Notes under the pieces: generated by a model
What the model saw: only the letters and a program-made list of their open reading frames with translations
What the model was told of the DNA's origin: nothing
Database searches by the model: none
Position numbers and translations under genes: made by a program
DNA from: Macrostomum lignano
Taxonomy: Eukaryota
Assembly (NCBI GenBank): GCA_002269645.1
Contig: NIVC01002174.1
Location: 1-39,815 of the forward strand
DNA length: 39,815 nucleotides
Direction: 5' to 3'
Shown here: positions 1,969-30,537 of the stretch, piece by piece
Position numbering within the stretch: the first letter of the stretch is position 1
Layout of the letters: each line of letters starts with the position of its first letter

Positions 1969-3949
1969 TCAAGAAGTGTTGGATGACCCGGTTTCCTTTT
2001 CCGAACTCGGCGATCCAGCGGCAATGCTATCGATTGAGCAAGGCCTCCCATACCAGTCCCGGACTGCATCCAGCAGCCAACCTCGCAGCACAGCCGTCCT
2101 ATCGATAACCTTTTGAATTCTTTCTTTCAGTCGTCGTTTCAACTCGACATCATGGCAGTACAGCGCCGCTGTGACCAGCTCCTGGGCGTCTGCGTCCGCT
2201 CGCACAGCCACGTCTCTGATCCAGCCATGAGCTTCCTCGATGCCCACTTTCAGCTCAATTCGGAGACACTGGAGAAGTGCGTCAAAGTTCACAGAAAAAT
2301 TTGTGTAATAATTCTCCAGTTGAAAAATTACGCATTCAGACATCCGTCTGGAAATGAAGGAATACGTTGGGCGCTGATGCAGTGTGAAGCAAAACTTCCA
2401 AGCCGAGTCGGAGTTACAGAGATGTTGCCAAACTAGCTCCGTCGCCGAGCTCGAGACTGGCTTCTCAGTCGGCCAAGAGAAACCTCGCCTAACTTTGTGC
2501 AATCTGCACCCGATGAGAATATCGGCTGCCGCATCCTGGAGGCCAAATTTCAGACACGCAAGGACTCTCAGCGATTCGCGAGCGGTTCGAGCGCAATCGG
2601 GCAGTTTTCCTATCAAATCCAGGAGTCCCAGATGCGATTTGGAGCTGCAGTCGTAGTCAGACAGGAACATTAGCGCTTCGCGAACAACATCGTAGATCTC
2701 GTGGTACTCGATTTTATTTGACTTTGGCGATGGGTTTTGTGCATGCATGTATGGCAGCACAACAAATGGATGAAAGTAGAACATGTCGCCATCGTTGATT
2801 GATCGCAGAGTGCTCATAAACTGTATTACTAGCTCGTCAAAGTTTTCTGTCAAGTGAGTCAGTGCTCTAGCAATGGTTTCAAGAAAAGCCTTCATCTCCT
2901 CTGCTGCTTTCGGTTCCACACCCTTCAGGTACAGAGCCGTGTCGCAGAGAAAGAAATGGTCTAAAATTTTTCCTTCTCCGTTATTATGCCCGGCGTTTTT
3001 CTCAACTGAGTCCCGAAGAATCTTGAGCGACTTCTTTGTGAGGCTGATAAGATTTTCTGGCCGCCATCGCTCGCGTGGTGTTGTCTCAAGCATTCGGAAT
3101 GTGGTAGTCTTGACGTGGTATGCCTTCAGTCCTTGAATACGAGTATTGTAGGAATCTTTGCTGCTGATAACCTTCTTCACCAGATACTTGAGAATGATAA
3201 ACAGCTGCCCTTGGACAGTGTTTAGACTTCTCAGAAGAAGCTTCTCCAGAAATGTTGTGCTGACTCGAAGCTGTCTTCCTGCCTGATTTTGAGGTGCTGC
3301 GTGCACCACATGGCAGTGTGTAGAGGCGAGCGCCTGTTCCAGGGACAGAAGCAGGGACTCTGGAATTTCGGAGTCTACGACTCTGTCCGGCAGCAGCGGC
3401 GCAATCGGGGGGTAGCAGCAGACCCGACGCGCGTCCACCAGGTCTACGGCGGGCTTCAACACGGATCCCAACAGCGGTTCGGCAGGATTCGATGCTGTGG
3501 GATGGATTTAATTTACAGTTGCATCTCGTAATTGGGAAACAGAGTATAAAAGCTTTAGTATATGGGGTATTTAAAGCAAGCCAATTACCGAAACCAGGGC
3601 AAAAAATGTGACCATTGGTGTACTCCACTTGTTCGTCTTCCACCAAATCGCATCGGCATACGCCCCTAATGTGGTAATCTCTTCCAGAGATAAGCCTCAT
3701 CACATCAATGTCGGACTCAATGTCTGTCGTGCCATCCAGGGCGGACAGATTGTTGCCCCAGCTTTCGGAATAGCTTCCCACGACAAATACTTCATTGTCA
3801 CGCAGGCGCCTTCGCAGAATATCCTGCAAAACGTCTGCGACCGCGGCTTGAGCTTTGGCTCGAGATTCCGTAAACCCGGACTGCGATAGGCGCCTGTGTA
3901 GAAGCACGCTGAGCTCATTTTCTTTTTGCAGCACCCTGAAATGCAACAT
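1969..3949 (-). CDS. Mab-21 / cGAS-like nucleotidyltransferase portion with C-terminal helical extension (94-bp intron at 3495-3588)
   Basis: Motifs VVGSYSESWG, ESDIDVM (DxD), AVDLV (third acidic residue), LRVSTTFLEKLLL, LKAYHVKT and LDHFFL match the Mab-21/cGLR pattern. The 94-bp GT-AG intron links the two track ORFs (3086-3949 and 1969-3471) in frame. Confidence 0.85.
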
Positions 3950-6217
3950 TTTACTGCCTATAGTCTCAAATAATTCAAAACAATCTAGTAGAATAGTAAA
4001 AAAGTATAAATGAAAATATTAGCTTCTTCTTGTTGTTTCAATTCGAAACGACTTTAATTAGAGGTGAAATTACGGATTGCAACTGTTTAAAACAACTTTA
4101 TGCTGGAGATCTCTTATAGTTAGCATTTAGCCATGCAGGGTAGCTTCGAGCGATCGTAAGCCAGATGTCTCATTGTCGCAATACTGGCTAATTTTCAATT
4201 TTGCAAATCACTTAATATATATTCCACACAGGACTAAAATGTTCTTACGCTTTTTCATCTGACGTCAAATCGTTGGAGTCAACTTGAGGTTGACTCGTGG
4301 GTGAATCTGGCATCCATTTCTCATCCGGTAAGTTGTTTTGTTGAGCCACCGCCACGGCACCTGAATTAGCGGCTTCTTGGCCACTTTGCTTGTCTTCGAC
4401 TAATCGCACCGAGAGTAGTACTTCTTGACCCTGCTGAAGACTGCTTTCGGCACCGGCTTCCATTAAGGACTTGACCACCCTTTCGTGACCCTGTACAGCT
4501 GCAAAAACCAGTGGAGTTATTCCATTGGCCTGGGTCACATCAACGTCTGCTTGTGCATCGATTAATTCCGTCACCACCTCCGCACTTCCTTGGTACGAAG
4601 CCAAATGTAGAGGAGTTAATCCATCGGCTGACTTGATATCGACATTGGCTTGAGCTCTAATCAGCTGTTTTGTGACTCTTAACTCATTCACTTGAGCAGT
4701 AGCGTGCAAAGCTGACATCCAATTGCCTCCTATCAAGTCCACGTCAGCCGGAGCTTTGATGAGTAAATCAACAGCTTTAGTGTGACCTTGATGCGAAGCG
4801 ATGAACAATGGAGACTCACCGTCGTTTGACATTGTGTCAATGTCTGCTTGAGCTTTGATGAGAGAGTCTGCCACTCTGTCGTGCCCGTTTGCACAGGCAA
4901 TAAACAGTGGCGTTGCGCCACTAGCTGTCTGGGTGTCCACATGGGCTCCTTCCCTTATGAGAAGATTTACAACCTTTAGATGCCCTTGCTGAGCTGCAAT
5001 AAAAAGAGGCGTAGCGCCCTCCCGTTGCTGAACGTTCAATTCAGCCTTAGCATCAACAAGAGCCTGAGCAATTTTGAAATGACCAATTTGGCAAGCGACG
5101 TACAGTGGTGATTCGTTGTCAACTTGCCTCAAGTTTACATCTGCTCTCGATTGGATGAGCAGACTCACCACTTCACTATGTCCGCGGTGAGTGGCAGCTA
5201 GCATGCAGGAAACTCCAGAGTTGTCTTGGCTGTTAAAACATTTGCTTGGGCCTCAACGAGTGCTTTCACAACTCTATGGTGACCCCGAAACGATGCAATA
5301 TGAAGCGGTGAAGTACCTGTGCACTCTTGAGTATCGAAGTCCGCTAGCGCTTTTATTAACACATTCAAAACTTCGTGATGGCCATTTTGTGATGCAACGT
5401 AAGACGGCGACATGCCATTGTGCTTGGAAAGATTAACATCAGCGCTTGCAGCAACCAGAGCCTGTACAACACGCCGATGTCCATTCTGAGATGCGAGATA
5501 CAGTGGCGAGCAGCCTTTGGCATCTTGACAGCTCAAATTAATTTGAGCTGTCAAAAGTAGCTCCACAACTTTCAAGTGACCCTCCTGCGATGCAATATAG
5601 AGAGGTGAAATTCCGACAAGATTAGCCACATTTGCGTTCGCTTCCGCCTTGACGAGCGCCCGGACGACCTCGTGATGCTGGCCGAATGAAGCAGCGTGCA
5701 GCGGAGAAACAAGAACTTCCCTATTGATGCAACGGTCGATGTCAGCTTGAGCTTCGATGAGGAGTTGAACGATTCCAATATGGCCTTCCTGCGACGCGAT
5801 ATACAGCGGTGATGCGTGAATGCCTTCAAATTTATTCACATCGGCTTGAGCTTTGATTAGCAAGTCTGCTAGGAAGTAATAACCATTCTGAGAAGCAAGG
5901 TACAAAGGTGTGCAGCCGTCTGAGTCCAATAAATCAATGTCAGCTTGAGCTTCAATCAGTCGTTTTAGAACTTCAAGCCTACCTATAATGCATGTGAGGT
6001 GCAAAGGTGAAAACTGCTCGCCTAGAACGGGTAATTCGACGTCAAGGTTGTTCCGAGCTTCCAGATAGCGGTCCACAACGGTAAGATTGCCTTCCAAGAT
6101 CGACCGCATGAATTGCTCGTCCGTCGGATAGGGAACATCAGCCTCGGGTTGGTCAGGCTCAGAGGCAATCATGAGAACAGTGGCTATCCATTTGATCACT
6201 TCTTGTATTAGCGACAT
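1969..6217 (-). CDS. Predicted ankyrin-repeat / Mab-21 (cGAS-like receptor, cGLR) fusion protein, ~1,280 aa; exons 6217-4249, 3935-3589, 3494-1969; one frameshift at ~5235-5238
   Basis: Donor GC|GTAAGA at 4249/4248 (phase 2) joins acceptor TTTCAG|G at 3936/3935, giving GCG and continuing in frame into VLQKENELSVLL. The second intron 3588-3495 (G|GTAATT...CCCACAG|CA) gives ...PGF-A-SNPAEPLLGSVLKPAVDLV. Both junctions conserve frame. No transcript evidence available. Confidence 0.68.
4245..6217 (-). CDS. Ankyrin-repeat region (~16-17 repeats), split by a frameshift into track ORFs 5198-6217 and 4245-5204
   Basis: Repeated G-x-[ST]PL[YHF]-x-A-x-x-x-GH-x-x-VV-x-x-L-I-x-AQADV[DN] units. At the break, AAT GTT [TT] AAC AGC CAA GAC AAC TCT GGA GTT TCC TGC ATG restores a normal repeat linker (ANVNSQDNSGVSCML). 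Confidence 0.9.
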
Positions 6218-8452
6218 GGCCGCTTTTTTAGTTCAAACAGAAACCAAGCCTTTCAGTAGTTAATTCTATCAGCATAAGCGCGTTTCTCTGACTCTGTTAG
6301 TCGTCGCGAGCTAGTCTGTTAACAATCTTTTGCGCGTCAAATGCAGCTTAGTCCTATTTTTATTGCAGAGTTGAAGCTACAGTGTGTACTGAAGTTTCTA
6401 CCCCCAAGCATAAGCGCGTAATAATGGCCTCATAAATCTGCCTGGAAATTCGTAGCATCTAGAAAAGATCAGAATTAAACAGACCCGTCGGGCAAGCCTG
6501 CTTCAGTTCACTCGCGTACATTCTTGTGCGCAGCCGGGCGCCTCCATTGGCTACGAGTTTTGATTCTATGCCAGAATTTGCTAGCTCATTACAAATTTGC
6601 ATGCTACACACGACCGGTAGTACACCACTATAGCAGCCAGCCAGCATGGAAGCATACAGTGCGATGATCTTTAAACCATAGGCAGACGGATGCCGTTTTC
6701 ATCCACTCTGTCTACGTCCAAGCCAGACGGCATAAAATCAATCTCTATGGGCCAGATTCGTTAGATTTTTCACCACAGCCGTTCCCGACGACTAGAAGCC
6801 GAAAACGGCCATATAGATCTTATTTACAAGGACTACTGACTACTATATATAACCATATTTATAATGAATAGAACTTCTATTACTTCATCTATATGTATCT
6901 AACACACCAATAAGGCAACAATATGTTTTGAAGTGAAACGAAACCGTCGTTAGCAAGAGGATGGGAGAAATCATCCAGCCTTGGCAGCAACACCCAGATG
7001 CACAAGATCTGCATGCCTAAAAATAAGCCCTGATGATCGGCAAGCGAGAAGCCCAGCCATGCGACCCTCGCGTGATGCATGAATCTCCTCTGGCCGACGG
7101 CTCCTATTGGGCCTTCCACTTTCTTCCCCTATTCCTCGTTGCTCGCGTACAGTCTGTTAACTTATAAAATATACTGATTGAAGAGGAAAGATCCTCGCCT
7201 GAAGTTTGAGAATGTGACTCTAGAGATCACACAGAGAAAGTACCATCGAGTCCATTGTTCGTTGTCTTCCTGAACTGTTGGCAGAAGTAACGATTATGTG
7301 GGAAAAACCCTTATAAATTGTCGTTTCAGTTTCTCACAGTGAATGATAAAGTACATGCACAGAGTAGATAGTTTACAGTCGATTAACAGCCACCACGAAA
7401 CAAGAGCCAGGAGACTGTTCTAGACTGAAAAAATGTTTTCTGTGGCTGCTAGACTGAACGAGTGTGTATTTTACTGAATTTAATGCAGAAAAACAATGCA
7501 GTTAATGTGAACTGAGGTTGACTATAATAGTATAGTAGTCAAAAGTAGTCAACTAGTCAAAACTAAACTAAAAGTAAAATTCTCGTATAAAGCAGTCCGT
7601 ATAAATGAATTAAATTAGCAAACAGACACTAAATCTAAGCGAGACTACTATCCGTCGGGAACGCGGTTATAAGCGCCTAAAACTGCAGTCAAATAGAGAT
7701 TTCAAGCCGCAAATTGAGCTTCGGCAAACATTGAGCCGTTGAAAATCGAAAAAGATCGATAAGAAATTAACGAATTTAAGCTCCGCTAAGGATCAAAATA
7801 CTTTGTACCGGTCTGTCAATTACCTTACTGCAAGAGTTACGCTTATGCGTTACACATAGCTAAGTCTTGAGCTACCGAAGTCTGAGGATCTACATATAAA
7901 TACAGTAAATAATTAGTCTTTCCAGGTAAACCGTGCATGTCTAAGGCCGCTGAAAAGCTGAGGCATAAGCAATGAGCAATAAGCAACACGCAAATCGTAC
8001 TGATGCAACAGGGACAACCGCTTTGCGTTGCAAAAGGTATTGGCCAGATGGGAAGTTTTCAGGATTTTTGGCACAATACGACGCTCGGATAGCGTTATAA
8101 GCTTTATAAGCTTTTATAAGCTTTTATAAGCTATAAGCTATCATAGTACATCCGATATGTGAATATCGTCCGAAATGCAGAAGAAGAATAAAAAATATTT
8201 CTCTTCCAGGTTGGTTCACAGTTTTTTTCAACAAAATGTTTGAAAACCGTTCAAAATACAGTGGTTGCAAAGATCCACTTTCAACATAGCACTGAATAGG
8301 GCTTTCACCAATATGTGTCCGGTAACATTTCAAGATAAATTAGCTCGGAAAACTTACACGATTCGCGAGCGTAGAGCCCTTCTATTCTAGATTTCTACGC
8401 AAATTTACTCAACAATCGCTGAAATTATTCAGAGTGCCTGGCATTTGTCCCA

Positions 8453-10890
8453 TCAAGTCTGGGCGTCCCAGCCCCACTCGGGGTGAATGCGGTAGTGCCC
8501 CGGGCTTGCTGGCTGCAGCTCTCGCAGACGGGCAGGCGCTGGCGTCGGCGCCGTTGCCTTCGCTGCTCTTGACTCCTGCGGCTTCGTGCCGTGCCAGCTG
8601 GTGAACTGCCAGCGGTTTGCCCGGCTGCCGGGGCTGAGCTGCCTGATGTACTTCAGTGTTGTTGTCGCTGGAGTTGTTTCTGAAGAGTTTCTGAAATAGC
8701 ACACCAGCACATCTAGAATTATCGTCTCACATTCGCGACTTTATACAGTTATAACTACTGAGTAACTATGGAAGCCGAGTCATAGATAATGACTATGGTT
8801 TTTATGTGAAAAATACGCACTAAATAAATCCCGACGAGCTTTAAATGAATGTGCTTAAGTTTTTTAATTCTTTTTGCGTGATCTGTTTTTTTGCCTTTCG
8901 ATTTGACGGCGCAAATTCCTTCTATTTTAGTTATCTACGTTAACGATTGCAGCAACACACTTAGCACTCACTCTGAAGTTCGTGAAAGCAGCTTCGCGGT
9001 TGTCTCACCGCCTGGACGCCGCTCTTCAGCGCTATCAGCATCGCGCGATCCCTTGGCTTGACTGTCTGGCATCAGCCTGAGCGCTCGCCGCACAACTCTG
9101 AGCTCTGCTGGCGAGGCATTTTTGGTCAGCTGTTGGGCTCGAGTCAGCGCGTGCGAGCTGGCGCTGCTGCTACCTGCCTGTTGAATGAGGGGTTGTCGCG
9201 TGGTTCACACCTATGAGGGCTACCTGCAAACTCACAGACTGTACATTTCATTCCTGACGATTACAAAGTCTGTGTACACCCTGTGTGAGCGTGTGTATGA
9301 GAGCCTGTCTGCGTTCGGTATCCGCCTGATTGTATGTGGTCAGGAGTCAGTGGAATGTGTAAAACTGTCTCAACCGCTGGTTGTGGGTGATGTCGCAAGG
9401 TTGCCCACAACTGCTTCCTCAGGACAATGTCTTTCTGTTTTTAAACTCTCATCATTAGCTTTAATATCTCCTAAAGTCTGCGGTGTCCTATACTATCCAA
9501 TTACAATCAGAGACACCCTTGTAACCAGGGACGTCTCCATCGGGGGGGGGGGGGGAGACATGTCCCCCGAGTAAAAGCTATGGGGACATGACAAGGCTTT
9601 GTCCCCCCACCCCACCTTGCGATCTGTGATGGAAATCAATAATTTTGCTTCGGGTGACAAAACATAGCGCCTGCGGCGCCAAAATGATTGCCTGAGGTGC
9701 CAAAATGAGCGCTGCAGACAACACCGATTCTGAAAATAATGTACATGTAGGAGTTTGTTGTTAAACGAGGGTGGGAAGCCAGGGGCCCCCGCGGATCAGC
9801 CCAAGTAGGGCTCTGCCGCTGGATCTGTCTGTGGGCGATACTACCAGGGGCATATAGCCCGAGAGCCCACGGTTGGGACCAGGTCTCAAGGCCTGGTGAG
9901 ATATTGGGGCTGCTAGCTCAAACCTATGGACTAAGACACCGCTGAACAACAGTGGAATCAGGGACGTTGCTAAGACTGAGTCCACCCAAGCCACCCCCAG
10001 CAGACAAGTCCCAGGAGTCGCGCAAAAAGATTGGAGTTTAGAAGCGGTTCGAGAGCGGGGAGACCACGAAGTCTACGGAAAAGGCTTTAGATTGGAGCGA
10101 GTCTGGGCAACTTATTTACCAAGGGCGAGTCTCCTAACAGGTAGCCCCCCGTACTAAGCCTCACATAGGGCTGCGAGCCATACTTGTACATGTAGAATTC
10201 TTGGCTTTGTCCTCCACACCATAAAATCCATGGCGACGCCCCTATTTGTAACATCAGAACCTGTTGCATTGTCGGCGACTCCAGCTGACAGGCCACATCA
10301 TCCGCGAGGACTCACCCTAATGGAGAGAACCTGGGCGTTTCGTCGACTGCCTACTGGCTGACGCCGGCACCCCTGACTCGTTGTTGGCATTGCGTACGTT
10401 TGCGCCCAGGTCCAGAGGCGAGCCCTGTGACGCTGCTCTCTTTTAGCGCTAACTGACAGTGTATAAATTTTTGTTTGAAGTCTTGCATGTACGATAATGT
10501 TGCTTACCGTGGTGCCCGGTAGTTCTGGAAATCGTTGCGTTGCCAGAGCAACTTTTAATGACGATTTGCCTTCGACTTTGGCAGTTGCCTTTGACTGCGG
10601 CTTCTGCTCCGCTTTTTTGTCAGAATTTTCAGCTAAAAGTTTCCGGGATTATGGTTATTTTGGTCTGTAATGGCCTTATTGAATACGATCTTTGAGTAAA
10701 CATTGGCTCGCTACTCAGTTGTAATGTTTTTTTTACCGGCGCGTCTTCCGGCCGTCTCGGGTCCAAAGTTGCTCCGAAATTCCTCCTTCAGCTGTTGCCG
10801 ACGCGCGTTCGGTACGGGGGCGTCGAACTCCGGTGGCAGCTGCCATTTCACGAATGCAGCGGCACCTGTTGCGGAGGATTGGCTGGCCAT
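8453..10890 (-). CDS. Probable small multi-exon orphan gene (exons ~10890-10737, 10632-10508, 9177-9009, 8679-8453; ~225 aa, low complexity, ends ...HYRIHPEWGWDAQT*)
   Basis: Four GC-rich islands bounded by AG/GT sites (G|GTAAAA, TTTAG|CT, ACG|GTAAGC, CAACAG|GCA, G|GTGAGA, CTTCAG|AA). Phases chain consistently (1,0,1) without stops. No recognisable domain. The 5' end and additional exons are uncertain. Confidence 0.45.
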
Positions 10891-11688
10891 TTGTGCAGCT
10901 GAAAGGCGCCTGCTGCCGGTCTGGGTGAGCTGTTTCTCGGGTATTCTACACTCGGCAAGCTTCGTTTTTTCAGCTTATTTAAAATGCATACACTGTAGGG
11001 TCTATTGATGATGTACATTAATTCAAGTTTTCATTTCGTAGCCTTTGGACCGAGAGAACGATGTAGATCTTCTGCCCGCTGCAACTAAATTTGAAATGAA
11101 GTGGTGGTACGCGCATTGAGCTGCAAGTGTGGGCTTTAGTCTGCAAATATAATGTTTATCAGCTACCCCATTGCTCGGGTTGGCTACTAAAGTCTGAGGG
11201 ATTGCTGTATTGATTTATGCAGAACTATTCGCTGTTGCCTGTACATGTACATGCGCATGTAGTAAAGATCGGCAAAATAAATAAGCGTAGACCTGCTGTC
11301 CTTGTGGAAGTGTTGAGACCATGAGGGTGCATTTTGGGTGACATATCCATTAAATGGCACCAAAAAAGTTTTCTGAAGTGATGGGTTTCGACCTTCGGGC
11401 TCCTTGTTAGGGAAGCCTGCGGGCCTCAGGCTCAGAAATAAATCAATTAGAGACCTGGCCCCCCACTCCTGTCAGATGGTCAGCCCCATGGTAGCTTGAT
11501 CGTGTGGCGAGCAGTCTAGGTCCTATAGCTAAGAGAGGGACAGCGAGAGACGAGCAGGGAGAATTTTGAAAGTAGAAATTAGCTAATCCGCAGATCAACT
11601 AACTTGCTGCCACCAGCCCGTGCGCCCTGGCTCACCACACCGGGACTCTCGAAATCGGGCTTCCGACTAGAAGGGGCTTTGCACTTAC

Positions 11689-19480: not shown

Positions 19481-20259
19481 TGCCACACTTTCTGGTGCTT
19501 TCCTCTTTTTTCGATACGCTTGGAGCTGGCTGCATAGATAAGAATGCTTGTTTGAGAGTTTAAGTTTAAAGTTTTAAGTTTTATCATAAAAAATATTGAA
19601 ACCATGTGCATGGTATTCAGGTACCATGGTACGAGTATTGCGACACCATTGAGGACTGAATATTTCAACGAAAAATTACTTCCAAGAAGTGTACACATTT
19701 TAAACTAATTTGAAATAGCATTACCACTTCTCACACTCTCTGGCTGGTGCAGCTATAATAATCAGCTAAGAGTACAATTTGCTGAGTTGCCGTAATGTCT
19801 AGTTGACAAAATGCCGGTTGACGAAATGTCCGTTCACCTGTTTGAGAGATTTTTGTGGGATATTTTGCAAGTGGATATTTATCCCCCTGAGGTTTTAAAA
19901 CTCTATAATGAGTAAATTGTAAGCACCGACCCGCTTGAAAATGAGACAGTCACTACCATTTTTTGTCCCACATATCGATCGAAGTGGGGCAGCAGGGGAA
20001 GGACCATTTTTGTGTTGCTGTTTTGTCCCACAACGCGGTCTTGGACCCCCCCCCCAAATATGAATTTCTATAGAAAAGCCTGCTTGCCAGATAGCCATTT
20101 GGTCAGCAAACGAAATGCCTTCCGCAAGGCCTGCATTTGTACTGAAATTAGTAGAGATCTTGAATGTTCAAAACAGCTGGCAAACAGGTATTGAAAAAAC
20201 TAAAACTACTGTGTGTGGTCCAAATTTGGTTGTTATATTAAAATGTACGAAAATCATTG

Positions 20260-23200
20260 ATGGATTGCCAATCAAACCCCGCAGCCAGCAGTTTGGAGGC
20301 CCCCCAAGCAGTTCTCCGCAGTCCCATGAGCAACCCGCACCGGCCCAGCTCTGGGGCCAGCGCCAACAGGCACAGCAATGCCCCCGGCGGCGCCTCCCGG
20401 AATGAGGCCTTCCTGATGGTGGGGCCGAACTTCAAGGTTGGCAAGAAGATCGGCTCTGGTAACTTTGGCGAACTCCGGCTGGGCAAGAACATCTACAACA
20501 ATGAGCACGTGGCCGTTAAACTGGAGCCGCTGAAGTCCAGGGCGCCGCAGCTGCATCTGGAGTTCCGCTTCTACAGCGAGCTGGGAACCAGCGAGGGAAT
20601 CCCGCAGATTTTCTATTTTGGCCCGACACACAAGTACAATGCGCTGGTCATGGAGCTGCTGGGGCCCTCGCTTGAGGATCTGTTTGACATCTGCGACAGG
20701 CACTTCAGTCTCAAGACTGTGCTCATGATTGCTGTACAACTGGTGAGTGCTTAAGACTGTGCTCATGGTTGCTGTACAACTGGTGAGTGCTCAAGACTGT
20801 GCTCATGATTGCTGTACAACTGGTGAGTGCTCAAGACTGTGCTCATGATTGCTGTACAACTGGTGAGTGCTCAAGACTGTGCTCATGATTGCTGTACAAC
20901 TGGTGAGTGCTCAAGACTGTGCTCATGATTGCTGTACAACTGGTGAGTGCTCAAGACTGTGCTCATGATTGCTGTACAACTAGTGAGTGCCCAAGACTGT
21001 ACTGATGAGTGCTCAAGACTGCTCAATGCTTGCCGACTCGCCCTCAGCTGCACCGCATTGAGTACGTGCACTCGCACCGTCTCATCTATCGCGACATCAA
21101 GCCGGAGAACTTCCTGATCGGGCGGCAGACCACCCGCAGACAGCACATCATCCACATTATCGATTTCGGTCTGGCCAAGGAGTACATTGACAAGGACACT
21201 GGCAAGCACATCCCGTACAGAGAGCACAAGAGCCTCACCGGCACTGCTCGGTACATGAGCATCAACACGCATTTAGGCAAGGGTGAGTAGTTGCAGCTGA
21301 CTCATAGAGTATCCTTTAAGATGTGGGTCAGCTGACCCATCGAGTATCCAATTCAGCTTGTGGGTCAGCTGACCCATCGAGTATCCAATTCAGCTTGTGG
21401 GTCAGCTGACCCATCGAGTATCCTTCAGTTTGCGGGTCAGCTGACCCATTGAGTATCCAATTCAGCTTGTGGGTCAGCTGACCCATCGAGTATCCAATTC
21501 AGCTTGTGGGTCAGCTGACCCATCGAGTATCCTTCAGTTTGCGGGTCAGCTGACCCATCGAGTATCCAATTCAGTTTGTGGGTCAGCTGACCCATCGAGT
21601 ATCCTTCAGTTTGTAGGTCAGCTGACTGATTTAGTATTATTCAGTGTACTGCAGGAGTTGATAACTTAAGAGTAAGTAATCTTCTCTCAACGGTAAAGCT
21701 GTTTCTAATTATCGAATGCTGATTAATACCCAGTCTGGCGTAATTCGGTGTCCCGCGGGAGCTCGCGAATTCAATTCTCCTTTAGTAATTCTCCATCGCC
21801 CCCCTCCTGCCCAGAGCAATCCAGACGCGACGACCTGGAGGCGCTGGGCCACATGTTCATGTACTTCCTGCGCGGCAGCCTGCCCTGGCAGGGCCTCAAG
21901 GCCGACAACCTGAAGGAGCGCTACCAGAAAATTGGCGACACGAAACGGGCAACGCCTATTGAAGTGCTGTGCGAGGGTTTCCCCGGTGAGTGCCGAGTGT
22001 GACTGGAATCTAGTAATTATTAGGAATCTCCCATATCGTAGTGGCATTTTCCCAAAAGCTTCCTGATCCCAAATATCCTATCTGTCACTTCCCGATCCCA
22101 AGTATCCTATCTGTCAACTCCCGATCCCAAATATCCTATCTGTCACTTCCCGATCCCAAATATCCCATTTGTCACTTCCCGATCCCAAATATCCTATCTG
22201 TCACTTCCCGATCCCAAATATCCCATCCGTCAACTCCCGATCCCAAATATCCTATCTGTCACTTCCCGATCCCAAATATCCTATCTGTCACTTCCCGATC
22301 CCAAATATCCTATCTGTCAACTCCCGATCCCAAATATCTTGTCTGTCAACTCCCGATCCCAAATATCCTATCTGTCACTTCCCGATCCCAAATATCCTAT
22401 CTGTCACTTCCCGATCCCAAATATCCTATCTGTCAACTCCCGATCCCAAATATCCTATCTGTCACTTCCCGATCCCAAATATCCCATCCGTCAACTCCCG
22501 ATCTCAAATATCCTATCTGTCACTTCCCGATCCCAAATATCCTATCTGTCACTTCCCGATCCCAAATATCCCATCTGTCAACTCCCGATCCCAAATTCCC
22601 CAAACGCCGCAGAGGAGCTGGCCAGCTACCTTCGGTACGTCCGCGGCCTGGACTTCTACCAGGACCCTGACTACGCCTTCCTGCGCTCGCTGTTCACTGA
22701 ACTGATGGCCAAGAACGGCTGGTCCTGCGACTGGGACTTCGACTGGCTGTCCCGGCAGGAGCAGACCGTAAGCCCATGAGTCGATGAGCTCTCATAGCTA
22801 CGACCTTTATATGTTTGAGACGGCTTGTGCCTTGCCGAGGGAGATAAGCGAGCATGCCTATAGGGAGAATGCTTTATGGGCGAGAGAGAGAGAGTCTAAA
22901 TTGGCGATGCGGAAAATCTGATGATTGATGCGCTTTACGGGACTTCTAAACTTCAGAAATCGTTTTCTTTAGAAATTGATTAGTGTTTATTTAAGCTACT
23001 TTTATAAGTAGAAATTTAGAAATTTTATCCTATTTATATTTATATTGTTCTGTTTTTCGGTCCCCGCAGGGCACCCCAGTCAGCGGCGGCGCGGATGCTG
23101 ATGCGAAAGCCCGGCACGGGCCGTCCACTCAGAAAGTAAGCTGCCCAGCAGAGTACTCATTATTCCAGCTTTCCGCCCCTGGCATTCCAGCTTTCCACCC

Positions 23201-26200
23201 CTGGCATTCCAGCCTTCCGCCCCCTGGCATTCCAGCTTTCCGCCCCTGGCATTCCAGCCTTCCGGAGATTCACTCTGATCTCTGGAGAATTCACCTCTAA
23301 ATTCACTCTGATCTCTGGAGAATTCACCTCTAAATTCACCCTGATCTCCGAAAAGTTCACCTCTAAATTCACCCTGATCTCTGGAGAATTCACCTCTAAA
23401 TTCACCCTGATCTCTGGAGAATTCACCTCTAAATTCACCCTGATCTCTGGAGAATTCACCTCTAAATTCACCCTGATCTCTGGAGAATTCACCTCTAAAT
23501 TCACCCTGATCTCTGGAGAATTCACCTCTAAATTCACCCTGATCTCTGGAGAATTCACCTCTAAATTCACTCTGATTTCCGGAGAATTCACCTCTAAATT
23601 CACCCTGATCTCTGGAGAATTCACCTCTAAATTCACTCTGATCTCCGGAGAATTCACCTCTAAATTCACCCTGATCTCTGGAGAATTCACCTCTAAATTC
23701 ACTCTGATCTCTGGAGAATTCACCTCTAAATTCACCCTGATCTCTGGAGAATTCACCTCTAAATTCACCCTGATCTCTGGAGAATTCACCTCTAAATTCA
23801 CTCTGATCTCTGGAGAATTCACCTCTAAATTCACTCTGATCTCTGGAGAATTCACCTCTAAATTCACTCTGATCTCTGGAGAATTCACCTCTAAATTCAC
23901 CCTGATCTCTGGAGAATTCACCTCTAAATTCACCCTGATCTCTGGAGAATTCACCTCTAAATTCACCCTGATCTCTGGAGAATTCACCTCTAAATTCACT
24001 CTGATCTCTGGAGAATTCACCTCTAAATTCACCCTGATCTCTGGAGAATTCACCTCTAAATTCACCCTGATCTCTGGAGAATTCACCTCTAAATTCACCC
24101 TGATCTCTGGAGAATTCACCTCTAAATTCACCCTGATCTCTGGAGAATTCACCTCTAAATTCACCCTGATCTCTGGAGAATTCACCTCTAAATTCTCACT
24201 CTGATCTCCGGAGAATTCACCTCTAAATTCACCCTGATCTCTGGAGAATTCACCTCTAAATTCACCCTGATCTCTGGAGAATTCACCTCTAAATTCACCC
24301 TGATCTCTGGAGAATTCACCTCTAAATTCTCACTCTGATCTCCGGAGAATTCACCTCTAAATTCACCCTGATCTCTGGAGAATTCACCTCTAAATTCACT
24401 CTGATTTCCGGAGAATTCACCTCTAAATTCTCACCCTGATCTCTGGAGAATTCACCTCTAAATTCTCACTCTGATCTCCGGAGAATTCACCTCTAAATTC
24501 TCACTCTGATCTCCGGAGAATTCACCTCTAAATTCTCACCCTGATCTCTGGAGAATTCACCTCTAAATTCTCACTCTGATCTCCGGAGAATTCACCTCTA
24601 AATTCTCACTCTGATCTCCGGAGAATTCACCTCTAAATTCTCACCCTGATCTCTGGAGAATTCACCTCTAAATTCACCCTGATCTCCGGAGAATTCACCT
24701 CTAAATTCACTCTGATCTCCGGAGAATTCACCTCTAAATTCTCACTCTGATCTCCGGAGAATTCACCTCTAAATTCTCACTCTGATCTCCAGAGAATTCA
24801 CCTCTAAATTCACCCTGATCTCTGGAGAATTCACCTCTAAATTCACCCTGATCTCTGGAGAATTCACCTCTAAATTCACTCTGATCTCCGGAGAATTCAC
24901 CTCTAAATTCACTCTGATCTCTGGAGAATTCACCTCTAAATTCTCACTCTGATCTCCGGAGAATTCACCTCTAAATTCACTCTGATTTCCGGAGAATTCA
25001 CCTCTAAATTCACCCTGATCTCTGGAGAATTCACCTCTAAATTCACTCTGATTTCCGGAGAATTCACCTCTAAATTCTCACTCTGATCTCCGGAGAATTC
25101 ACCTCTAAATTCTCACTCTGATCTCCGGAGAATTCACCTCTAAATTCACTCTGATCTCCGGAGAATTCACCTCTAAATTCACTCTGATCTCCGGAGAATT
25201 CACCTCTAAATTCACCCTGATCTCTGGAGAATTCACCTCTAAATTCACCCTGATCTCTGGAGAATTCACCTCTAAATTCACTCTGATTTCCGGAGAATTC
25301 ACCTCTAAATTCTCACTCTGATCTCCGGAGAATTCACCTCTAAATTCTCACTCTGATCTCCGGAGAATTCACCTCTAAATTCACTCTGATCTCCGGAGAA
25401 TTCACCTCTAAATTCACTCTGATCTCCGGAGAATTCACCTCTAAATTCACCCTGATCTCTGGAGAATTCACCTCTAAGTTCACCCTGAACTCAGCTCATA
25501 CAAAGCCGCAAGAGGCTGTCAGCGGCGCAGCATTTACCTGAGCCCCCCGTCCCCATTGCCGCAAGCAGCAGCCCGAGACCCCGCACCGGTTCCGCGATCG
25601 AACCACTCGCTACCAGCGGGAGGTTGATCACAATCGAGCTTTCGAATGCAGCGCCGAAACGGACAGGATGGTACTCTGATGGAGTAAAGCTGCCTACTTA
25701 GTAGATTTAGACTAGCATGTCCGCTATGAGCTACTGATGACTAATTTCAGTAGAGTAATGCGCATTTAATTGCTTTTAAATTCTTTTCGATTGATTATTC
25801 GGTTGCCTAAGCAATGTTATGCAGCTACTCTTATTGATCACACGCCCTCTGCTCAACCATCAGCTGACCAGCCTCAATAACCAGGCGGCCGGACTCACCG
25901 CCGAGTGCGTTGCCAATAGAAACAATTTAAACAAAAGAACCTGCGGCAGCCTCTCTGCTGAGCGGCCAGTCGCCTCCGTGCGCGTGATTGCTTTTATTGA
26001 TTCCACAGAGTTCCTGTTTATTATAAGCTTTTTTGTTTCGGTTTGGTTCTGACTGATGTTTGGACTTGCTGGACCAGCCTCCCAGATCCTCAGTTGCCAG
26101 ACCAGCCTCCCAGATCCTCAGTTGCCGGGCCAGCCTCCCAGATCCTCAGTTGCCGGGCCAGCCTCCCAGATCCTCAGTTGCCGGGCCAGCCTCCCAGATC

Positions 26201-26818
26201 CTCAGTTGCCGGGCCAGCCTCCCAGATCCTCAGTTGCCGGGCCAGCCTCCCAGATCCTCAGTTACTATGCCAGCCTCCCAGATCCTCAGTTGCTATGTCA
26301 GCCTCCCAGATCCTCAGTTGCTATGTCAGCCTCCCAGATCCTCAGTTGCTATGCCAGCCTCCCAGATCCTCAGTTACTATGCCAGCCTCCCAGATCCTCA
26401 GTTGCCGGGCCAGCCGGTCAGATCCGCCGCTATTTCCCCCCATCCTATTGATTGTCCAGTGGCTGCTGGTTGCCCGCTCCCATAGCTACAACTGAGTTGC
26501 TATCTCACGATCCTAAAAGGCCATTCAATTCAATCGCGTGACCCCTTCCGCCCCCAGGTGATCAGTTCCATGGCCTTCGACCAGGTGGGCGGCGGAGACG
26601 CGGCAGGCGCCGGCCAGACGTCCCGCCAGCCAATCGCGGCGGCCGGCGCCGACGCCGGAGGCGATCAGGAGGCCGACGAGGTGGGCAGCGGCGAGGCGAA
26701 GTGCTGCTTCTTCAGGCGGCGACGCAGGGCTGGGAAGAAGGCGCAAGAGCAGCAGCAGCAGCGCGCGGCGGCTGGCAAAAGCCGGGCTGATCAGCATTTG
26801 CATGCGCCGCTCGCGTAG
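20260..26818 (+). CDS. CSNK1G: Casein kinase 1 gamma (gilgamesh-like); exons 20260(or 20326)-20742, 21048-21282, 21815-21985, 22613-22767, 23070-23135, [possible exon ~25520-25680], 25864-25983, 26558-26818
   Basis: [108 protein letters not shown] and the C-terminal [11 protein letters not shown] motif typical of CK1-gamma. Canonical splice sites with consistent phases. Confidence 0.95.
20710..21000 (+). repeat. 40-bp tandem repeat made of the exon-1 end plus its splice donor (7 donors)
   Basis: Unit GTGAGTGCTCAAGACTGTGCTCATGATTGCTGTACAACTG; GTGAGT at 20743, 20783, 20823, 20863, 20903, 20943, 20983. Confidence 0.97.
21323..21628. repeat. 35/37-bp minisatellite in CK1 intron 2 (~8 copies)
   Basis: Unit GTGGGTCAGCTGACCCATCGAGTATCCAATTCAGCTT, containing the 14-bp palindrome GGGTCAGCTGACCC. 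Confidence 0.95.
22060..22595. repeat. 29-bp minisatellite in CK1 intron 3 (~18 copies)
   Basis: Unit CACTTCCCGATCCCAAATATCCTATCTGT with minor variants. Confidence 0.97.
23163..23260. repeat. 22-bp repeat (~4.5 copies)
   Basis: Unit TTCCAGCTTTCCGCCCCTGGCA. Confidence 0.9.
23261..25489. repeat. 33/35-bp satellite (~67 copies, 2.2 kb) in CK1 intron 5
   Basis: Unit GAGAATTCACCTCTAAATTCACCCTGATCTCTG (one GAATTC per unit). A 35-bp variant with a CT insertion appears from ~24190. Confidence 0.98.
26070..26420. repeat. 28-bp minisatellite in the last CK1 intron (~12 copies)
   Basis: Unit GCCAGCCTCCCAGATCCTCAGTTGCCGG. Confidence 0.95.
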
Positions 26819-26974
26819 CGCCGCCGTAGAGGGCGCGCGTCACAGGCGCTTCGGTCTGCTGTTTTTTGGCGAAACTCAGAATTTTCCTTTTTCATTTTCT
26901 TGGTTCGCATTCGCCTACTTCAAGTAGGCAAGTTTGGGACTCCAGCGTGTACTGGGGGTAGAATTTGATAAAAT

Positions 26975-27205
26975 GCTGCAGATTGGCTATTAGTTTCATC
27001 AGTATTGACAGATTGGCTGGCAGTTTTGAGTATTGGCAGATTGGCAGGTAGTTTTGAGTATTGGCAGATTGGCAGGTAGTTTTGAGTATTGGCAGATTGG
27101 CAGGTAGTTTTGAGTATTGGCAGATTGGCTAGCAGTTTCATGAGTATTGGCAGATTGGCTAGCAGTTTCATGAGTATTGGCAGATTGGCTGGTAGTTTCA
27201 TGAAT
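26975..27205. repeat. 28-30-bp minisatellite (~8 copies)
   Basis: Unit TTGGCAGATTGGCAGGTAGTTTTGAGTA and 30-bp variants. Confidence 0.92.
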
Positions 27206-27524
27206 ATTGGCAGAGGATCGGCCCGCAAGCTCAGCTATTTTACCTCGCTGAAACTAAAGGCCGCTTACTTTTATTGGAGACAAAACCCAATATTGTAACT
27301 CACTGCCCCGCTGCTTCCGCTGCAGCTTCTGCGACTGCAGCTTTTGCTTTGCTTTGCAAATTTCTGCCGTTTTTGTTATTTTTATCTACTGTAGCTTCCG
27401 CCATGCGATGGTCTGAGGGGTCGAGTGGGAAGATTCTGGCCTGCCAAAATTTCATATTGGAGGCCTCTCAATCATAGTATCGGCGCCTAGTAGTCACGCA
27501 TTTGTGGTAGGCTTTGAGGACTAC

Positions 27525-27770
27525 TCAGGGTAGATTTTGAAACTACTTGGGGTAGATTCTGGGACTATTTAGGGTAGATTCTGGGACTACTTGGGGTAGA
27601 TTCTGGGACTATTTAGGGTAGATTCTTGGACTACTTGGGGTAGATTCTGGGACTACCTAGGGTAGATTCTGGGACTACTTAGGGTAGATTCTGGGACTAC
27701 TTAGGGTAGATTCTGGGACTACTTAGGGTAGATTCTGGGCCTGCTTAGGGTAGATTCGGAGACTACTCAG
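27525..27770. repeat. 23-bp minisatellite (~10 copies)
   Basis: Unit GGGTAGATTCTGGGACTACTTAG. Confidence 0.93.
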
Positions 27771-28099
27771 AGTGGGTTAAAAATCAGCGTTCCCCCTACT
27801 CGATCCCCTGGCCATTCCTCAGACATGAATCCGTACGCGGAGACAGACATGGCTTACACAGAGTTCAAAGTATTTGACAACTGCATAAATGTACTTTAGC
27901 CGTCCGCATCGGACCAAAATGAGAGCCTCTTGGCTCTGCAGCTGCAGACACCAGTTCAAGCTGGGCGTTGCCTGCCGCTGTATTGCATAACGAACTTGAT
28001 GTCTCCAGATTCCAATTGCGCGGTTTTTTATCACTTTTGTGTTTGTAACTAATTTTGCTTCCAGTTTTTATCCTTGTGCTCATTATTATCGGAATTATA

Positions 28100-28735
28100 G
28101 TCGGCATTGAGCCCGGGTGAGACTCTCAGCTCCCAGTACTGTGAGACTGTCGGCATTGAGCCCAGGTGAGACTCTCAGCTCCCAGTACTGTGAGATTGTC
28201 GGCATTGAGCCCGGGTGAGACTCTCAGCTCCCAGTACTGTGAGATTGTCGGCATTGAGCCCGGGTGAGACTCTCAGCTCCCAGTACTGTGAGACTGTCGG
28301 CATTGAGCCCGGGTGAGACTCTCAGCTCCCAGTACTGTGAGATTGTCGGCATTGAGCCCGGGTGAGACTCTCAGCTCCCAGTACTGTGAGATTGTCGGCA
28401 TTGAGCCCGGGTGAGACTCTCAGCTCCCAGTACTGTGAGATTGTCGGCATTGAGCCCGGGTGAGACTCTCAGCTCCCAGTACTGTGAGATTGTCGGCATT
28501 GAGCCCGGGTGAGACTCTCAGCTCCCAGTACTGTGAGATTGTCGGCATTGAGCCCGGGCGGGACTCTCAGCTCCCAGTACTGTGAGATTGTCGGCATTGA
28601 GCCCGGGTGAGACTCTCAGCTCCCAGTACTGTGAGATTGTCGGCATTGAGCCCGGGTGGGACTCTCAGCTCCCAGTACTGTGAGATTGTCGGCATTGAGC
28701 CCGGGTGGGACTCTCAGCTCCCAGTACTGTGTGAT
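28100..28735. repeat. 49-bp minisatellite (~13 copies)
   Basis: Unit GTCGGCATTGAGCCCGGGTGAGACTCTCAGCTCCCAGTACTGTGAGATT, nearly invariant. Confidence 0.97.
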
Positions 28736-29029
28736 TGCTCGGTGACAACATTTTTTAACTCAATCATTTTAGCGTCACCAGTCTTAGTCTGTGAATTCAG
28801 TTTTACACCAATTAAACTGCCATTTTTACCTGTTCAAAGTCGATAATAAAAGATTATAATTTTTAGAATCGCACGCGCGCATATCAGTAGTATGTGAGCG
28901 AATTGAAAATGCTTTGTATTACAAATAAATTCATTTATTTATCAGTTTCTTGGCAGCCTGCGCGGAGGCAGATTTTCTAATTACTGCAACTGAAGTTCGT
29001 GCGGCTTATTTCACCACCTGATTTGCTGA

Positions 29030-29760
29030 CTTGAGTGAGTGCCAGTGTGTGCAGGAGTGATTTCCACTGTGTGCAGGAGTGGGTGCCAGTGTGTGTAGGA
29101 GTGGGTGCCAGTGTGTGCAGGAGTGATTTCCACTGTGTGCAGGAGTGGGTGCCAGTGTGTGCAGGAGTGGGTGCCAGTGTGTGCAGGAGTGGGTGCCAGT
29201 GTGTGCAGGAGTGATTTCCACTGTGTGCAGGAGTGATTTCCACTGTGTGCAGGAGTGGGTGCCAGTGTGTGCAGGAGTGGGTGCCAGTGTGTGCAGGAGT
29301 GGGTGCCAGTGTGTGCAGGAGTGATTTCCACTGTGTGCAGGAGTGATTTCCACTGTGTGCAGGAGTGGGTGCCAGTGTGTGCAGGAGTGGGTGCCAGTGT
29401 GTGCAGGAGTGGGTGCCAGTGTGTGCAGGAGTGATTTCCACTGTGTGCAGGAGTGATTTCCACTGTGTGCAGGAGTGGGTGCCAGTGTGTGCAGGAGTGA
29501 GTGCCAGTGTGTGCAGGAGTGAGTGCCAGTGTGTGCAGGAGTGAGTGCCAGTGTGTGCAGGATTAGGTGCCAGTGTGTGCAGGAGTGAGTGCCAGTGTGT
29601 GCAGGAGTGAGTGCCAGTGTGTGCAGGATTGGGTACCAGTGTGTGCAGGAGTGAGTGCCAGTGTGTGCAGGAGTGGGTGCCAGTGTGTGCAGGAGTGGGT
29701 GCCACTGTGTGCAGGAGTGAGTGCCAGTGTGTGCAGGAGTGAGTGCCAGTGTGTGCAGCA
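29030..29760. repeat. 22-bp minisatellite with two unit types (~33 copies)
   Basis: Units GTGCCAGTGTGTGCAGGAGTGG and ATTTCCACTGTGTGCAGGAGTG, interspersed. Confidence 0.97.
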
Positions 29761-30349: not shown

Positions 30350-30537
30350 GCAGCAGGCGCCAGGAGTTGGAGATCCCCAGATTCGGCCGGCCGCCCTCCC
30401 AGCTGCTGCCTGCCGGTGGCGGCGCCGGGCCCAGCAGCGGCCTGCAGAGCCACGCAATGCTGGACTTCAGGCGGACGCGATGGCGCCAGCGAAATCTGAT
30501 GAGCATGACGGATGACGAGCTGCGGCCTTTTATAGGC
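30350..30537 (+). CDS. Candidate upstream exon of the coiled-coil gene (…ELEIPRFGRPPSQLLPAGGG…NLMSMTDDELRPFIG)
   Basis: GC-rich open frame ending at GGC|GTGAGC and immediately followed by a repeat. Its phase does not join directly to the 32192 exon, so the link is unresolved. Confidence 0.4.

What the first reader, a model, noticed from the sequence alone, without database searches (positions are those of the whole stretch)
1969..6217. Ankyrin-array + cGAS-like (Mab-21) nucleotidyltransferase joined by in-frame splicing: candidate ANK-cGLR immune sensor
Seen: the ORF track shows four separate ORFs, but a GTAAGA donor overlaps the ankyrin stop codon (AAA GC|G TAA GA, 4249/4248). It pairs with a TTTCAG|G acceptor at 3936/3935 in exactly the right phase, and a second 94-bp intron completes the enzyme. 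The product is ~16-17 ankyrin repeats, a ~60-aa low-complexity linker, a Mab-21 domain with GS, DxD (SDIDV) and a third acidic residue (VDLV), and a ~250-aa helical tail. Established: cGAS/cGLR enzymes use this triad to make cyclic dinucleotides that activate STING, and animal cGLRs can carry accessory domains. Inference: a long ankyrin array could act as a protein-ligand sensor or autoinhibitory module in place of nucleic-acid sensing, i.e. an uncharacterised second-messenger immune receptor in an invertebrate.
Basis: partly seen in the sequence, partly recalled or inferred. Interest (0 to 1): 0.85.

Follow-up and report, generated by a model that had tools for sequence, protein, structure and literature searches.

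The report
Flatworm ankyrin–cGAS-like enzyme gene, already catalogued
This is a real, already annotated gene of the flatworm Macrostomum lignano that joins a long ankyrin-repeat array to a cGAS-like enzyme; it belongs to a large gene family already listed among animal cGAS-like immune receptors, and this copy carries a 2-base frameshift.

Summary
Exon ends and starts are 4249>3935 and 3589>3494 on the minus strand. The spliced translation matches GenBank protein PAA60250.1 (BOX15_Mlig018754g1, 942 aa) residue for residue. That protein sits on a 39,815-nt contig of Macrostomum lignano, which is this window.

The two ankyrin ORFs are out of frame because a T run at 5238-5235 has two extra T. The sister copy (PAA80483.1, 1277 aa) reads straight through. 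So the full 16-17-repeat protein cannot be made from this contig as it is assembled.

The enzyme part folds as cGAS: AlphaFold2 pLDDT 90.9, and the top 50 Foldseek PDB hits are all cGAS. It keeps the motif GS-X20-DID-X53-VDL and the nucleotide-binding residues. These are conserved in about 90% of paralogs. It has no zinc thumb and is mildly acidic, so a nucleic-acid ligand looks unlikely.

The family has at least 90 clusters at 50% identity, and every named member is M. lignano. Li et al. 2023 already listed ankyrin-fused cGLRs. They cloned five M. lignano relatives for their screen, and none is among their 15 characterised active enzymes.

Verdict: a real but ordinary new member of a known kind. 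Its product, ligand and receptor are unknown.

The parts
5239..6217 (-). First part of exon 1. It runs from start codon ATG 6217 through a short hydrophobic N-terminus, a capping half-repeat and ankyrin repeats 1-8.
   Evidence: ORF 6217-5198. Pfam Ank_2 E 1.9e-63. Same N-terminus as the intact copy P0057 and as paralogs P0017 and P0004.
5235..5238 (-). T run (TTTT) with two extra T relative to the sister copy. This frameshift splits the ankyrin array between repeats 8 and 9.
   Evidence: Alignment of window to L001 shows gaps at 5238-5237. Frame analysis. P0057 and P0030 read ..EAQANV|NSQDNSG...
4249..5234 (-). Rest of exon 1: ankyrin repeats 9-16 and the 66-aa low-complexity linker. The GenBank CDS of this contig starts at ATG 5204.
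   Evidence: ORF 5204-4245. Pfam Ank E 1.6e-51. P0058 is identical from MLAATHRGH.
3936..4248 (-). Intron 1, 313 nt, GTAAGA...TTTCAG. The apparent stop codon TAA lies inside the donor.
   Evidence: Sequence. Annotation P0058. 28 mismatches plus 31 gap columns against the sister copy.
3589..3935 (-). Exon 2: N-terminal helices and first half of the nucleotidyltransferase core. G53-S54 lie at 3778-3773, D75 at 3712-3710 and D77 at 3706-3704.
   Evidence: AF2 strands 49-52 and 75-81. Conservation of these residues in the family.
3495..3588 (-). Intron 2, 94 nt, GTAATT...CCACAG.
   Evidence: Sequence. Paralogs read ..GHIFCPGF|ASNPA.. without a gap. Annotation P0058.
2731..3494 (-). Exon 3, first part: the strand with the third acidic residue (D133, 3444-3442) and the Mab-21 C-terminal helix bundle (LRVSTTFLE, AYHVKT, HFFL motifs).
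   Evidence: hhalign against a cGAS/cGLR profile gives 96.6%, E 5.5e-10. PDB profile search finds mouse cGAS at E 1e-6. Pfam Mab-21_C 21.7 bits. Foldseek.
1969..2730 (-). Exon 3, second part: a family-specific, mostly helical C-terminal domain (residues ~371-600 of the enzyme part), a disordered end and the stop codon TGA at 1971-1969.
   Evidence: AF2 pLDDT is mostly above 90 up to residue ~580. Conserved in paralogs. Outside the family, only fragments that look like partial models of family members match this part alone.

Best explanation
Shown:
- The locus is copy g1 of the Macrostomum lignano gene Mlig018754. It lies on the minus strand at 6217-1969 and has three exons and two GT-AG introns.
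- The intact form (sister copy g3, 1277 aa) encodes 16-17 ankyrin repeats, a 66-aa linker, a cGAS-like nucleotidyltransferase and a family-specific helical C-terminal domain of about 230 aa.
- The enzyme part has a complete active site: GS 709-710, DID 731-733 and D789 in the intact copy.
- In this contig a 2-nt insertion in a T run breaks the ankyrin array. Only an 8-repeat, 942-aa version is annotated.
- The gene is one of a very large M. lignano expansion of ankyrin-fused cGAS-like receptors (cGLRs).

Inferred mechanism:
- The enzyme is held inactive until the ankyrin array, perhaps together with the tightly packed C-terminal domain, binds a protein or other non-nucleic-acid ligand.
- The Mab-21 core then uses its metal-binding triad and its conserved Arg/Ser/Glu/Tyr/Lys nucleotide contacts to join NTPs into a cyclic di- or oligonucleotide signal.
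- A downstream receptor reads that signal. Its identity in this animal is unknown.
For: Gene structure:
- The spliced translation equals PAA60250.1.
- The sister locus L001 is colinear at ~97% identity with the same two introns.
- Paralogs are ungapped across both junctions.

Fold and family:
- The AF2 model has pLDDT 90.9 and pTM 0.91.
- The Foldseek top 50 are all cGAS, with E from 3e-8, probability 1.0, TM 0.52-0.59 on the target and ~380-400 aligned columns.
- hhalign against a cGAS/cGLR profile gives 96.6%. A PDB profile search finds cGAS at E 1e-6.
- BLASTP gives 34% identity, E 3e-69, to PAA86972.1, a protein curated and cloned as a cGLR by Li et al..

Active site:
- The motif is GS-X20-DIDV-X53-VDL.
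- In the family the catalytic residues are kept in 34-37 of 38-39 sequences, and R192, S194, E199, Y241 and K244 in 39-41 of 41-42.
- pN/pS between the two copies is 0.08 in the last exon, 0.24 in ANK2 and 0.46 in ANK1.

Non-nucleic-acid ligand:
- The zinc thumb is absent (gap).
- The core has pI 6.5 and the ankyrin array pI 5.2.
Against: - No product or activity has been shown. Five relatives cloned for Li et al.'s 140-enzyme screen carry no 'active' note. Their cloned sequences start just before the enzyme part, and the screen offered only nucleic-acid ligands.
- Pfam finds no PF03281 match, and Mab-21_C scores 21.7 bits against a cutoff of 24.1.
- The residue before GS is V, not the Q/T of the published motif.
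- cGAS and STING are reported lost in other flatworms. I could not check M. lignano for STING.
- A caspase-fused paralog has a degenerate triad, so not every family member needs catalysis.
- This contig's copy is frameshifted.
Confidence: 0.62

Rival explanations
1. Non-catalytic scaffold. The Mab-21 module binds a nucleotide or a partner but makes no messenger, as proposed for MAB21L1/2 or MID51. The protein would signal through protein-protein contacts of its ankyrin array and C-terminal domain, for example towards caspases.
For: - Five relatives cloned for the screen are not listed as active.
- Paralogs P0094 and P0116 carry a caspase domain in the same chain.
- P0094 has D-x-N and Ser in place of DxD and the third Asp.
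- Li et al. note that Mab21L1/2 keep a complete putative site with no known product.
Against: - The triad and five nucleotide-contact residues are kept in about 90% of paralogs that are only 30-50% identical overall.
- pN/pS is 0.08 in the enzyme exon.
- The published screen used N-terminally trimmed constructs and only nucleic-acid ligands, so a negative result there is weak.
Confidence: 0.22
2. This particular copy is a dead or crippled allele or duplicate. The 2-nt insertion is real. The transcript would yield only a 339-aa ankyrin-only peptide, and the enzyme part would not be translated.
For: - TTTT versus TT at 5238-5235.
- ORF1 stops at 5198, and the GenBank CDS is truncated to 942 aa.
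- The window is a short, minisatellite-rich contig that is 97% identical to a 605-kb contig carrying the intact gene.
- ANK1, upstream of the shift, shows the highest divergence and pN/pS 0.46.
Against: - A homopolymer indel in a long-read assembly could be an error.
- Everything downstream is intact, with very low pN/pS.
- Paralogs with few ankyrin repeats exist (P0004, 871 aa), so a short form might work if it had its own start.
Confidence: 0.45
3. A cGAS-type nucleic-acid sensor: the enzyme core itself binds dsDNA or dsRNA, and the ankyrin array is only an accessory.
For: The closest structures are DNA-bound cGAS. The known ligands of characterised cGLRs are dsDNA or dsRNA.
Against: - There is no zinc thumb.
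- The core has pI 6.5.
- Relatives were not among the actives when offered a nucleic-acid pool.
Confidence: 0.08
4. Two independent genes, one ankyrin-only and one Mab-21-only, that merely lie next to each other.
For: The ORF track shows a stop codon at 4247-4245 and an ATG at 3949.
Against: - The stop lies inside a consensus donor, and the ATG lies in the AT-rich intron.
- The annotated protein and dozens of paralogs carry both parts in one chain.
- The intron is the most diverged segment.
Confidence: 0.03

Closest known systems
Ankyrin-fused cGAS-like receptors (cGLRs) catalogued by Li et al. 2023 (PMC9980059). These include M. lignano PAA86972.1, PAA45980.1, PAA68676.1, PAA67649.1 and PAA58690.1, and ANK-cGLRs of the coral Stylophora pistillata.
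   Same: Same architecture: N-terminal ankyrin array plus cGLR core. The M. lignano entries also belong to the same family (34% identity, E 3e-69 to PAA86972.1). The active-site motif is the same and the C-terminal extension is shared.
   Different: This paralog's accessions were not found in the stored parts of their tables. It has one of the longer arrays, with 16-17 repeats. None of the family has a known product, ligand or receptor.
Mammalian cGAS (for example PDB 4k9b, 7utt, 6ct9)
   Same: Overall bilobed fold of NTase core plus helix bundle. It shares the GS, [DE]x[DE] and third acidic residue, and the equivalents of the WRLSFS..E and SYHVKT motifs.
   Different: Sequence identity is 12-16%. 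There is no zinc thumb, the pI is acidic to neutral, and the GS-to-DxD loop is longer (20 residues). It has an extra ~230-aa C-terminal domain and an N-terminal ankyrin array. Pfam PF03281 is not detected.
MAB21L1/MAB21L2 and MB21D2 (Mab-21 proteins with putatively complete sites but no known product)
   Same: Mab-21 fold with acidic residues retained and no demonstrated enzymatic product.
   Different: Those are single-domain, slowly evolving, single-copy developmental genes. This is a multi-domain member of a fast-expanding, lineage-specific family. M. lignano has its own canonical Mab-21 (PAA76228.1, PF03281 E 4e-91 in Li et al. Table S2).
TPR-fused cGLRs (unnamed ENA proteins of ~650-750 aa found as distant hits)
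   Same: A repeat-domain sensor module fused to a Mab-21 core. They match residues ~115-285 at E 1e-7 to 1e-4.
   Different: The repeat type and position differ. They hit PF03281 directly, lack the family-specific tail, and come from unidentified organisms.

Membership tests
cGLR (criteria of Li et al. 2023, PMC9980059) | Active-site motif h[QT]GS-X8-20-[DE]h[DE]h-X50-90-h[DE]h | tested here: met
   VVGS-X20-DIDV-X53-VDL. The only deviation is V in place of Q/T before GS. The M. lignano proteins accepted by Li et al. also vary there (M, L, F, T).
cGLR (criteria of Li et al. 2023) | Homology across both the NTase core and the C-terminal helix bundle | tested here: met
   Foldseek aligns ~380-400 columns covering whole cGAS catalytic domains of 341-363 residues. 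hhalign gives 96.6% over the bundle half.
cGLR (criteria of Li et al. 2023) | Predicted structural homology to known cGLR/CD-NTase enzymes | tested here: met
   AF2 pLDDT 90.9. The top 50 PDB matches are all cGAS, with probability 1.0 and TM 0.52-0.59 on the target.
cGLR (functional definition) | Ligand-activated synthesis of a nucleotide second messenger | not testable with these tools
   This needs biochemistry. Five relatives in the published screen carry no 'active' note.
cGLR-STING pathway | A STING (or other cyclic-nucleotide) receptor in the same genome | not tested
   No suitable search was available. The literature reports loss in Schistosoma and Schmidtea. M. lignano is absent from Li et al. 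Table S5 as stored.
Pfam Mab-21 (PF03281 NTase domain / PF20266 Mab-21_C) | Score at or above Pfam's gathering cutoff | tested here: not met
   There is no PF03281 hit at E<=0.1, and PF20266 scores 21.7 bits against a cutoff of 24.1. Of 60 aligned relatives, 50 hit PF20266 at E<=0.01 and 17 (not individually identified) hit PF03281.
cGAS proper (DNA sensor) | Zinc thumb H-X5-CC-X6-C and basic DNA-binding surfaces | tested here: not met
   The thumb region is a gap in the profile alignment. The core has pI 6.5.
Ankyrin-repeat proteins | Tandem 33-residue ANK repeats | tested here: met
   Ank_2 E 1.9e-63 and Ank E 1.6e-51. There are 16 repeat cores at exact 33-34-residue spacing in the intact copy.

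The most novel reading that the evidence does not exclude
M. lignano sits in a phylum said to have lost cGAS-STING. Its expansion of ankyrin-cGLR genes, at least 90 clusters at 50% identity, may be a diversified receptor repertoire analogous to NLR or TLR expansions. Variable ankyrin arrays would recognise different pathogen or danger proteins. The conserved NTase plus the family-specific C-terminal domain would signal through a STING-independent receptor. In the caspase-fused, triad-degenerate paralogs, signalling would go directly through a death protease.
Probability: 0.2. Interest if true: 0.7.

Novelty: new member of a known kind. Interest (0 to 1): 0.3.

Why it matters
For genome annotation it matters little. 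The gene model already exists in GenBank, and the ANK-cGLR architecture is published.

The remaining open point is biological. Flatworms are generally described as lacking cGAS and STING, yet this early-branching flatworm carries a very large family of cGLR-like enzymes with conserved active sites. Their ligand, product and receptor are unknown, and published screening did not report activity from the five relatives cloned. M. lignano is transgenic and RNAi-tractable, so the family is a usable entry point for asking what repeat-domain-fused cGLRs sense and what they signal to when STING may be absent.

Tried and rejected
- Single-sequence Pfam and PDB searches of the enzyme part gave only sub-threshold hits: Mab-21_C 21.7 bits and cGAS E 0.4-0.8. 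Profiles and structure were needed.
- The first AF2 run, on 16 close paralogs, was unusable (pLDDT 57, core below 50). I did not use it for a fold search.
- hhalign aligned only the helix-bundle half. The N-lobe correspondence rests on the motif and on Foldseek.
- A 10-nt 'intron' (GTTTTAACAG) that might bridge the two ankyrin ORFs was considered and rejected. It is far too short and would remove residues that the repeat register requires.
- The 252-residue N-terminal extension in UniProt models A0A1I8G1W6 and A0A1I8FWB8 (P0030, P0059) was rejected as a merger with the upstream gene. NCBI annotates that gene separately (259 aa) at the sister locus, and paralogs start at the ATG equivalent to 6217.
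- No second copy of the gene lies in the window.
- Literature searches for Mlig018754 and for STING in M. lignano found nothing relevant.
- I ran no further search on STING. A 30%-identical flatworm STING would probably be missed, so a negative result would mean nothing.
Full report
**What is in the sequence**

On the minus strand, four ORFs lie head to tail: 6217-5198, 5204-4245, 3949-3086 and 3471-1969.
- Intron 1: AAAGC|GTAAGA, last exon base 4249, pairs with TTTCAG|G, first exon base 3935. The intron is 313 nt and AT-rich. The split codon gc|g gives Ala and runs on into VLQKENE.
- Intron 2: CG|GTAATT, last exon base 3589, pairs with CCACAG|C, first exon base 3494. The intron is 94 nt. The split codon g|ca gives Ala and runs on into SNPAEP.

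The repeat register requires ..EAQANV + NSQDNSGVSCMLAA.., but two extra bases sit between the GTT and AAC codons.

**Identity of the locus**

A protein search showed that essentially all relatives are from the flatworm Macrostomum lignano. The 90% cluster of the best hit contains two GenBank proteins.
- PAA60250.1 (BOX15_Mlig018754g1) is 942 aa and lies on a contig of exactly 39,815 nt, the length of this window. It is identical to my splice from ATG 5204 onward.
- PAA80483.1 (BOX15_Mlig018754g3) is 1277 aa and lies on a 605-kb contig. It is the same protein with the whole ankyrin array in one frame.

I fetched that sister locus as L001. It is colinear with the window at about 97% identity over more than 16 kb. 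Against it the window differs as follows:
- TTTT instead of TT at 5238-5235, which is the frameshift.
- An in-frame 6-nt indel at 3145-3140.
- Few exon substitutions: 5 in the 1515 aligned bases of the last exon.
- Many changes inside the two introns: intron 1 has 28 mismatches and 31 gap columns.
- No change at the splice sites.

pN/pS between the two copies is 0.46 for ankyrin repeats 1-8, 0.24 for repeats 9-16 plus linker, and 0.08 for the last exon. The counts are small. They say the enzyme part has stayed under constraint and the ankyrin array less so.

The UniProt models A0A1I8G1W6 and A0A1I8FWB8 add about 250 N-terminal residues. These map to window 10959-8478. NCBI annotates that stretch as a separate 259-aa gene at the sister locus, and paralogs begin at the equivalent of ATG 6217. 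I treat the extension as a merged gene model.

**What the protein is**

The intact copy has four parts:
- 16 regular ankyrin repeats at 33-34-residue spacing, plus an N-terminal half-repeat.
- A 66-residue low-complexity linker.
- A 623-residue part holding the enzyme and its tail.

Alone, that 623-residue part is weakly recognisable. Pfam gives only Mab-21_C at 21.7 bits, below the 24.1 cutoff, and no PF03281 hit. A single-sequence PDB search gives cGAS at E 0.4-0.8.

Family information makes the signal clear.
- A 16-sequence profile finds mouse cGAS at E 1e-6.
- hhalign against a small cGAS/cGLR profile, built from sequences printed in Li et al.'s Table S3, gives 96.6% probability and E 5.5e-10. 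It aligns LRVSTTFLE with WRLSFSHIE, AYHVKT with SYHVKT, and HFFL..D..YL with NYFIP..NLF. There is a gap where cGAS has its zinc thumb.
- AlphaFold2 on 16 close paralogs failed (pLDDT 57). On a 60-sequence alignment that included distant relatives it gave pLDDT 90.9 and pTM 0.91.
- In Foldseek against the PDB, the 50 best matches are all mouse, human or pig cGAS. E runs from 3e-8, probability is 1.0, TM is 0.52-0.59 normalised to the target, and about 380-400 columns align. That is the whole cGAS catalytic domain.

Residues ~371-600 form an additional, confidently predicted, mostly helical domain. Its match is found only within this family.

**Active site**

The motif reads VVG53-S54, 20 residues, D75-I-D77-V, 53 residues, V-D133-L. 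It fits the published cGLR pattern h[QT]GS-X8-20-[DE]h[DE]h-X50-90-h[DE]h, except for V in place of Q/T.

Across 43 family members that are 25-53% identical to this protein, conservation is high:

| Residue | Kept in |
|---|---|
| G53 | 36/38 |
| S54 | 36/38 |
| D75 | 37/39 |
| D77 | 34/38 |
| D133 | 34/39 |
| R192 | 39/41 |
| S194 | 39/41 |
| E199 | 41/42 |
| Y241 | 40/42 |
| K244 | 41/42 |

R192, S194 and E199 align with the R, first S and E of cGAS WRLSFSHIE, and Y241 and K244 with the Y and K of SYHVKT. From my own knowledge these are nucleotide-contact residues in cGAS. This conservation is the main argument that the family is enzymatically active.

The core has pI 6.5, the ankyrin array 5.2 and the tail 8.05. 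Together with the missing zinc thumb, this argues against cGAS-style nucleic-acid binding. That step is inference.

**Family and literature**

An exhaustive HMMER scan of 1.84 billion representatives found 184 hits, 92 of them at E<=1e-10. Every hit I could name is M. lignano. A few 38-45% identical fragments come from JGI metagenome contigs. The most distant hits are unnamed proteins of about 700 aa from ENA assemblies. TPR repeats and PF03281 were found among the aligned relatives, though I did not check which ones carry them.

Li et al. 2023 (PMC9980059) make the following points.
- Some cGLRs are fused to TPR or ankyrin modules.
- Their Table S2 lists Ank_2 domains in several M. lignano entries.
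- Their Table S3 rows 89-93 are five M. lignano proteins of this family, cloned for the 140-enzyme screen. One of them is 34% identical to this protein at E 3e-69.
- The 'Note' column, which marks the 15 characterised active enzymes, is empty for those five rows.

The kind is therefore known and catalogued, and activity is undemonstrated. cGAS and STING are reported lost in Schistosoma (PMC4117786) and not found in Schmidtea (PMC13563047). M. lignano keeps other antiviral genes such as Mx and RLRs. I could not determine whether it has STING.

**A hint about output**

Two relatives carry a caspase domain in the same chain:
- P0094: Mab-21, then ANK, then Peptidase_C14.
- PAA93319.1 (P0116): ANK, Mab-21, ANK, then caspase.

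In P0094 the NTase triad is degenerate (D-x-N, and Ser for the third Asp), while the caspase keeps SHG and QACRH. If those gene models are right, part of the family works as a scaffold wired directly to a death protease. That supports an immune or cell-death role for the family. It also keeps the non-catalytic rival alive.

**Verdict**

It is wrong by omission about the ankyrin array, which is frameshifted in this contig.
- The interpretation as a candidate ANK-cGLR is supported by structure, motif and family membership. It is not new, and its biochemical core is untested.
- Whether the frameshift is a real lesion or a homopolymer assembly error cannot be settled without reads.
- I rate it a new member of a known kind, with low to moderate interest.

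Noticed in passing
window 20257-21013 (+): A CK1-like protein kinase exon (Pkinase E 5e-6) ends in a 40-nt unit repeated 7.6 times. Each unit holds the last codons ([11 protein letters not shown]) plus a GTGAGT splice donor, so the exon end and its donor are tandemly multiplied.
   Followed up: partly
window 20700-39050: At least 17 separate minisatellite arrays with periods of 11-49 nt. One is a 33-nt unit repeated 66.5 times (23268-25492) with strong negative GC skew. They create long spurious ORFs on both strands, and roughly the second half of the contig is dominated by them.
   Followed up: partly
window 8478-10959 (-): Upstream neighbour gene in four exon blocks, 259 aa at the sister locus, low complexity, no Pfam hit on the one exon ORF scanned (8409-8702). 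UniProt models A0A1I8G1W6 and A0A1I8FWB8 fuse it to the ankyrin-cGLR gene. A0A1I8FWB8 also reads through intron 2.
   Followed up: yes
P0094; P0116 (PAA93319.1, BOX15_Mlig026614g1): Paralogs with a caspase (Peptidase_C14) domain fused after the Mab-21 module and a second ankyrin block. P0094 has lost two of the three catalytic acidic residues of the NTase but keeps the caspase His/Cys motifs.
   Followed up: partly
window 33600-35000: A GC-rich stretch (64-72% GC) with overlapping long ORFs on both strands and a coiled-coil-looking + strand ORF (34498-34989). It has no Pfam match and is interrupted by 13-, 27- and 20-nt arrays.
   Followed up: no
P0097 (A0A1I8I4L5), P0052, P0053: Other family members appear in UniProt models joined to WSC and RING domains, a death domain plus kinase name, or EGF/Delta domains. 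These are probably merged gene models from the older assembly, but this was not checked.
   Followed up: no
window 6161-6217 (-): The short hydrophobic N-terminus (MSLIQEVIKWIATVLMIAS) is shared in kind by paralogs (MQAILKALASVLMQAAG, MGFLQRLFSAVAACCL). It could be a membrane-association or capping helix.
   Followed up: no
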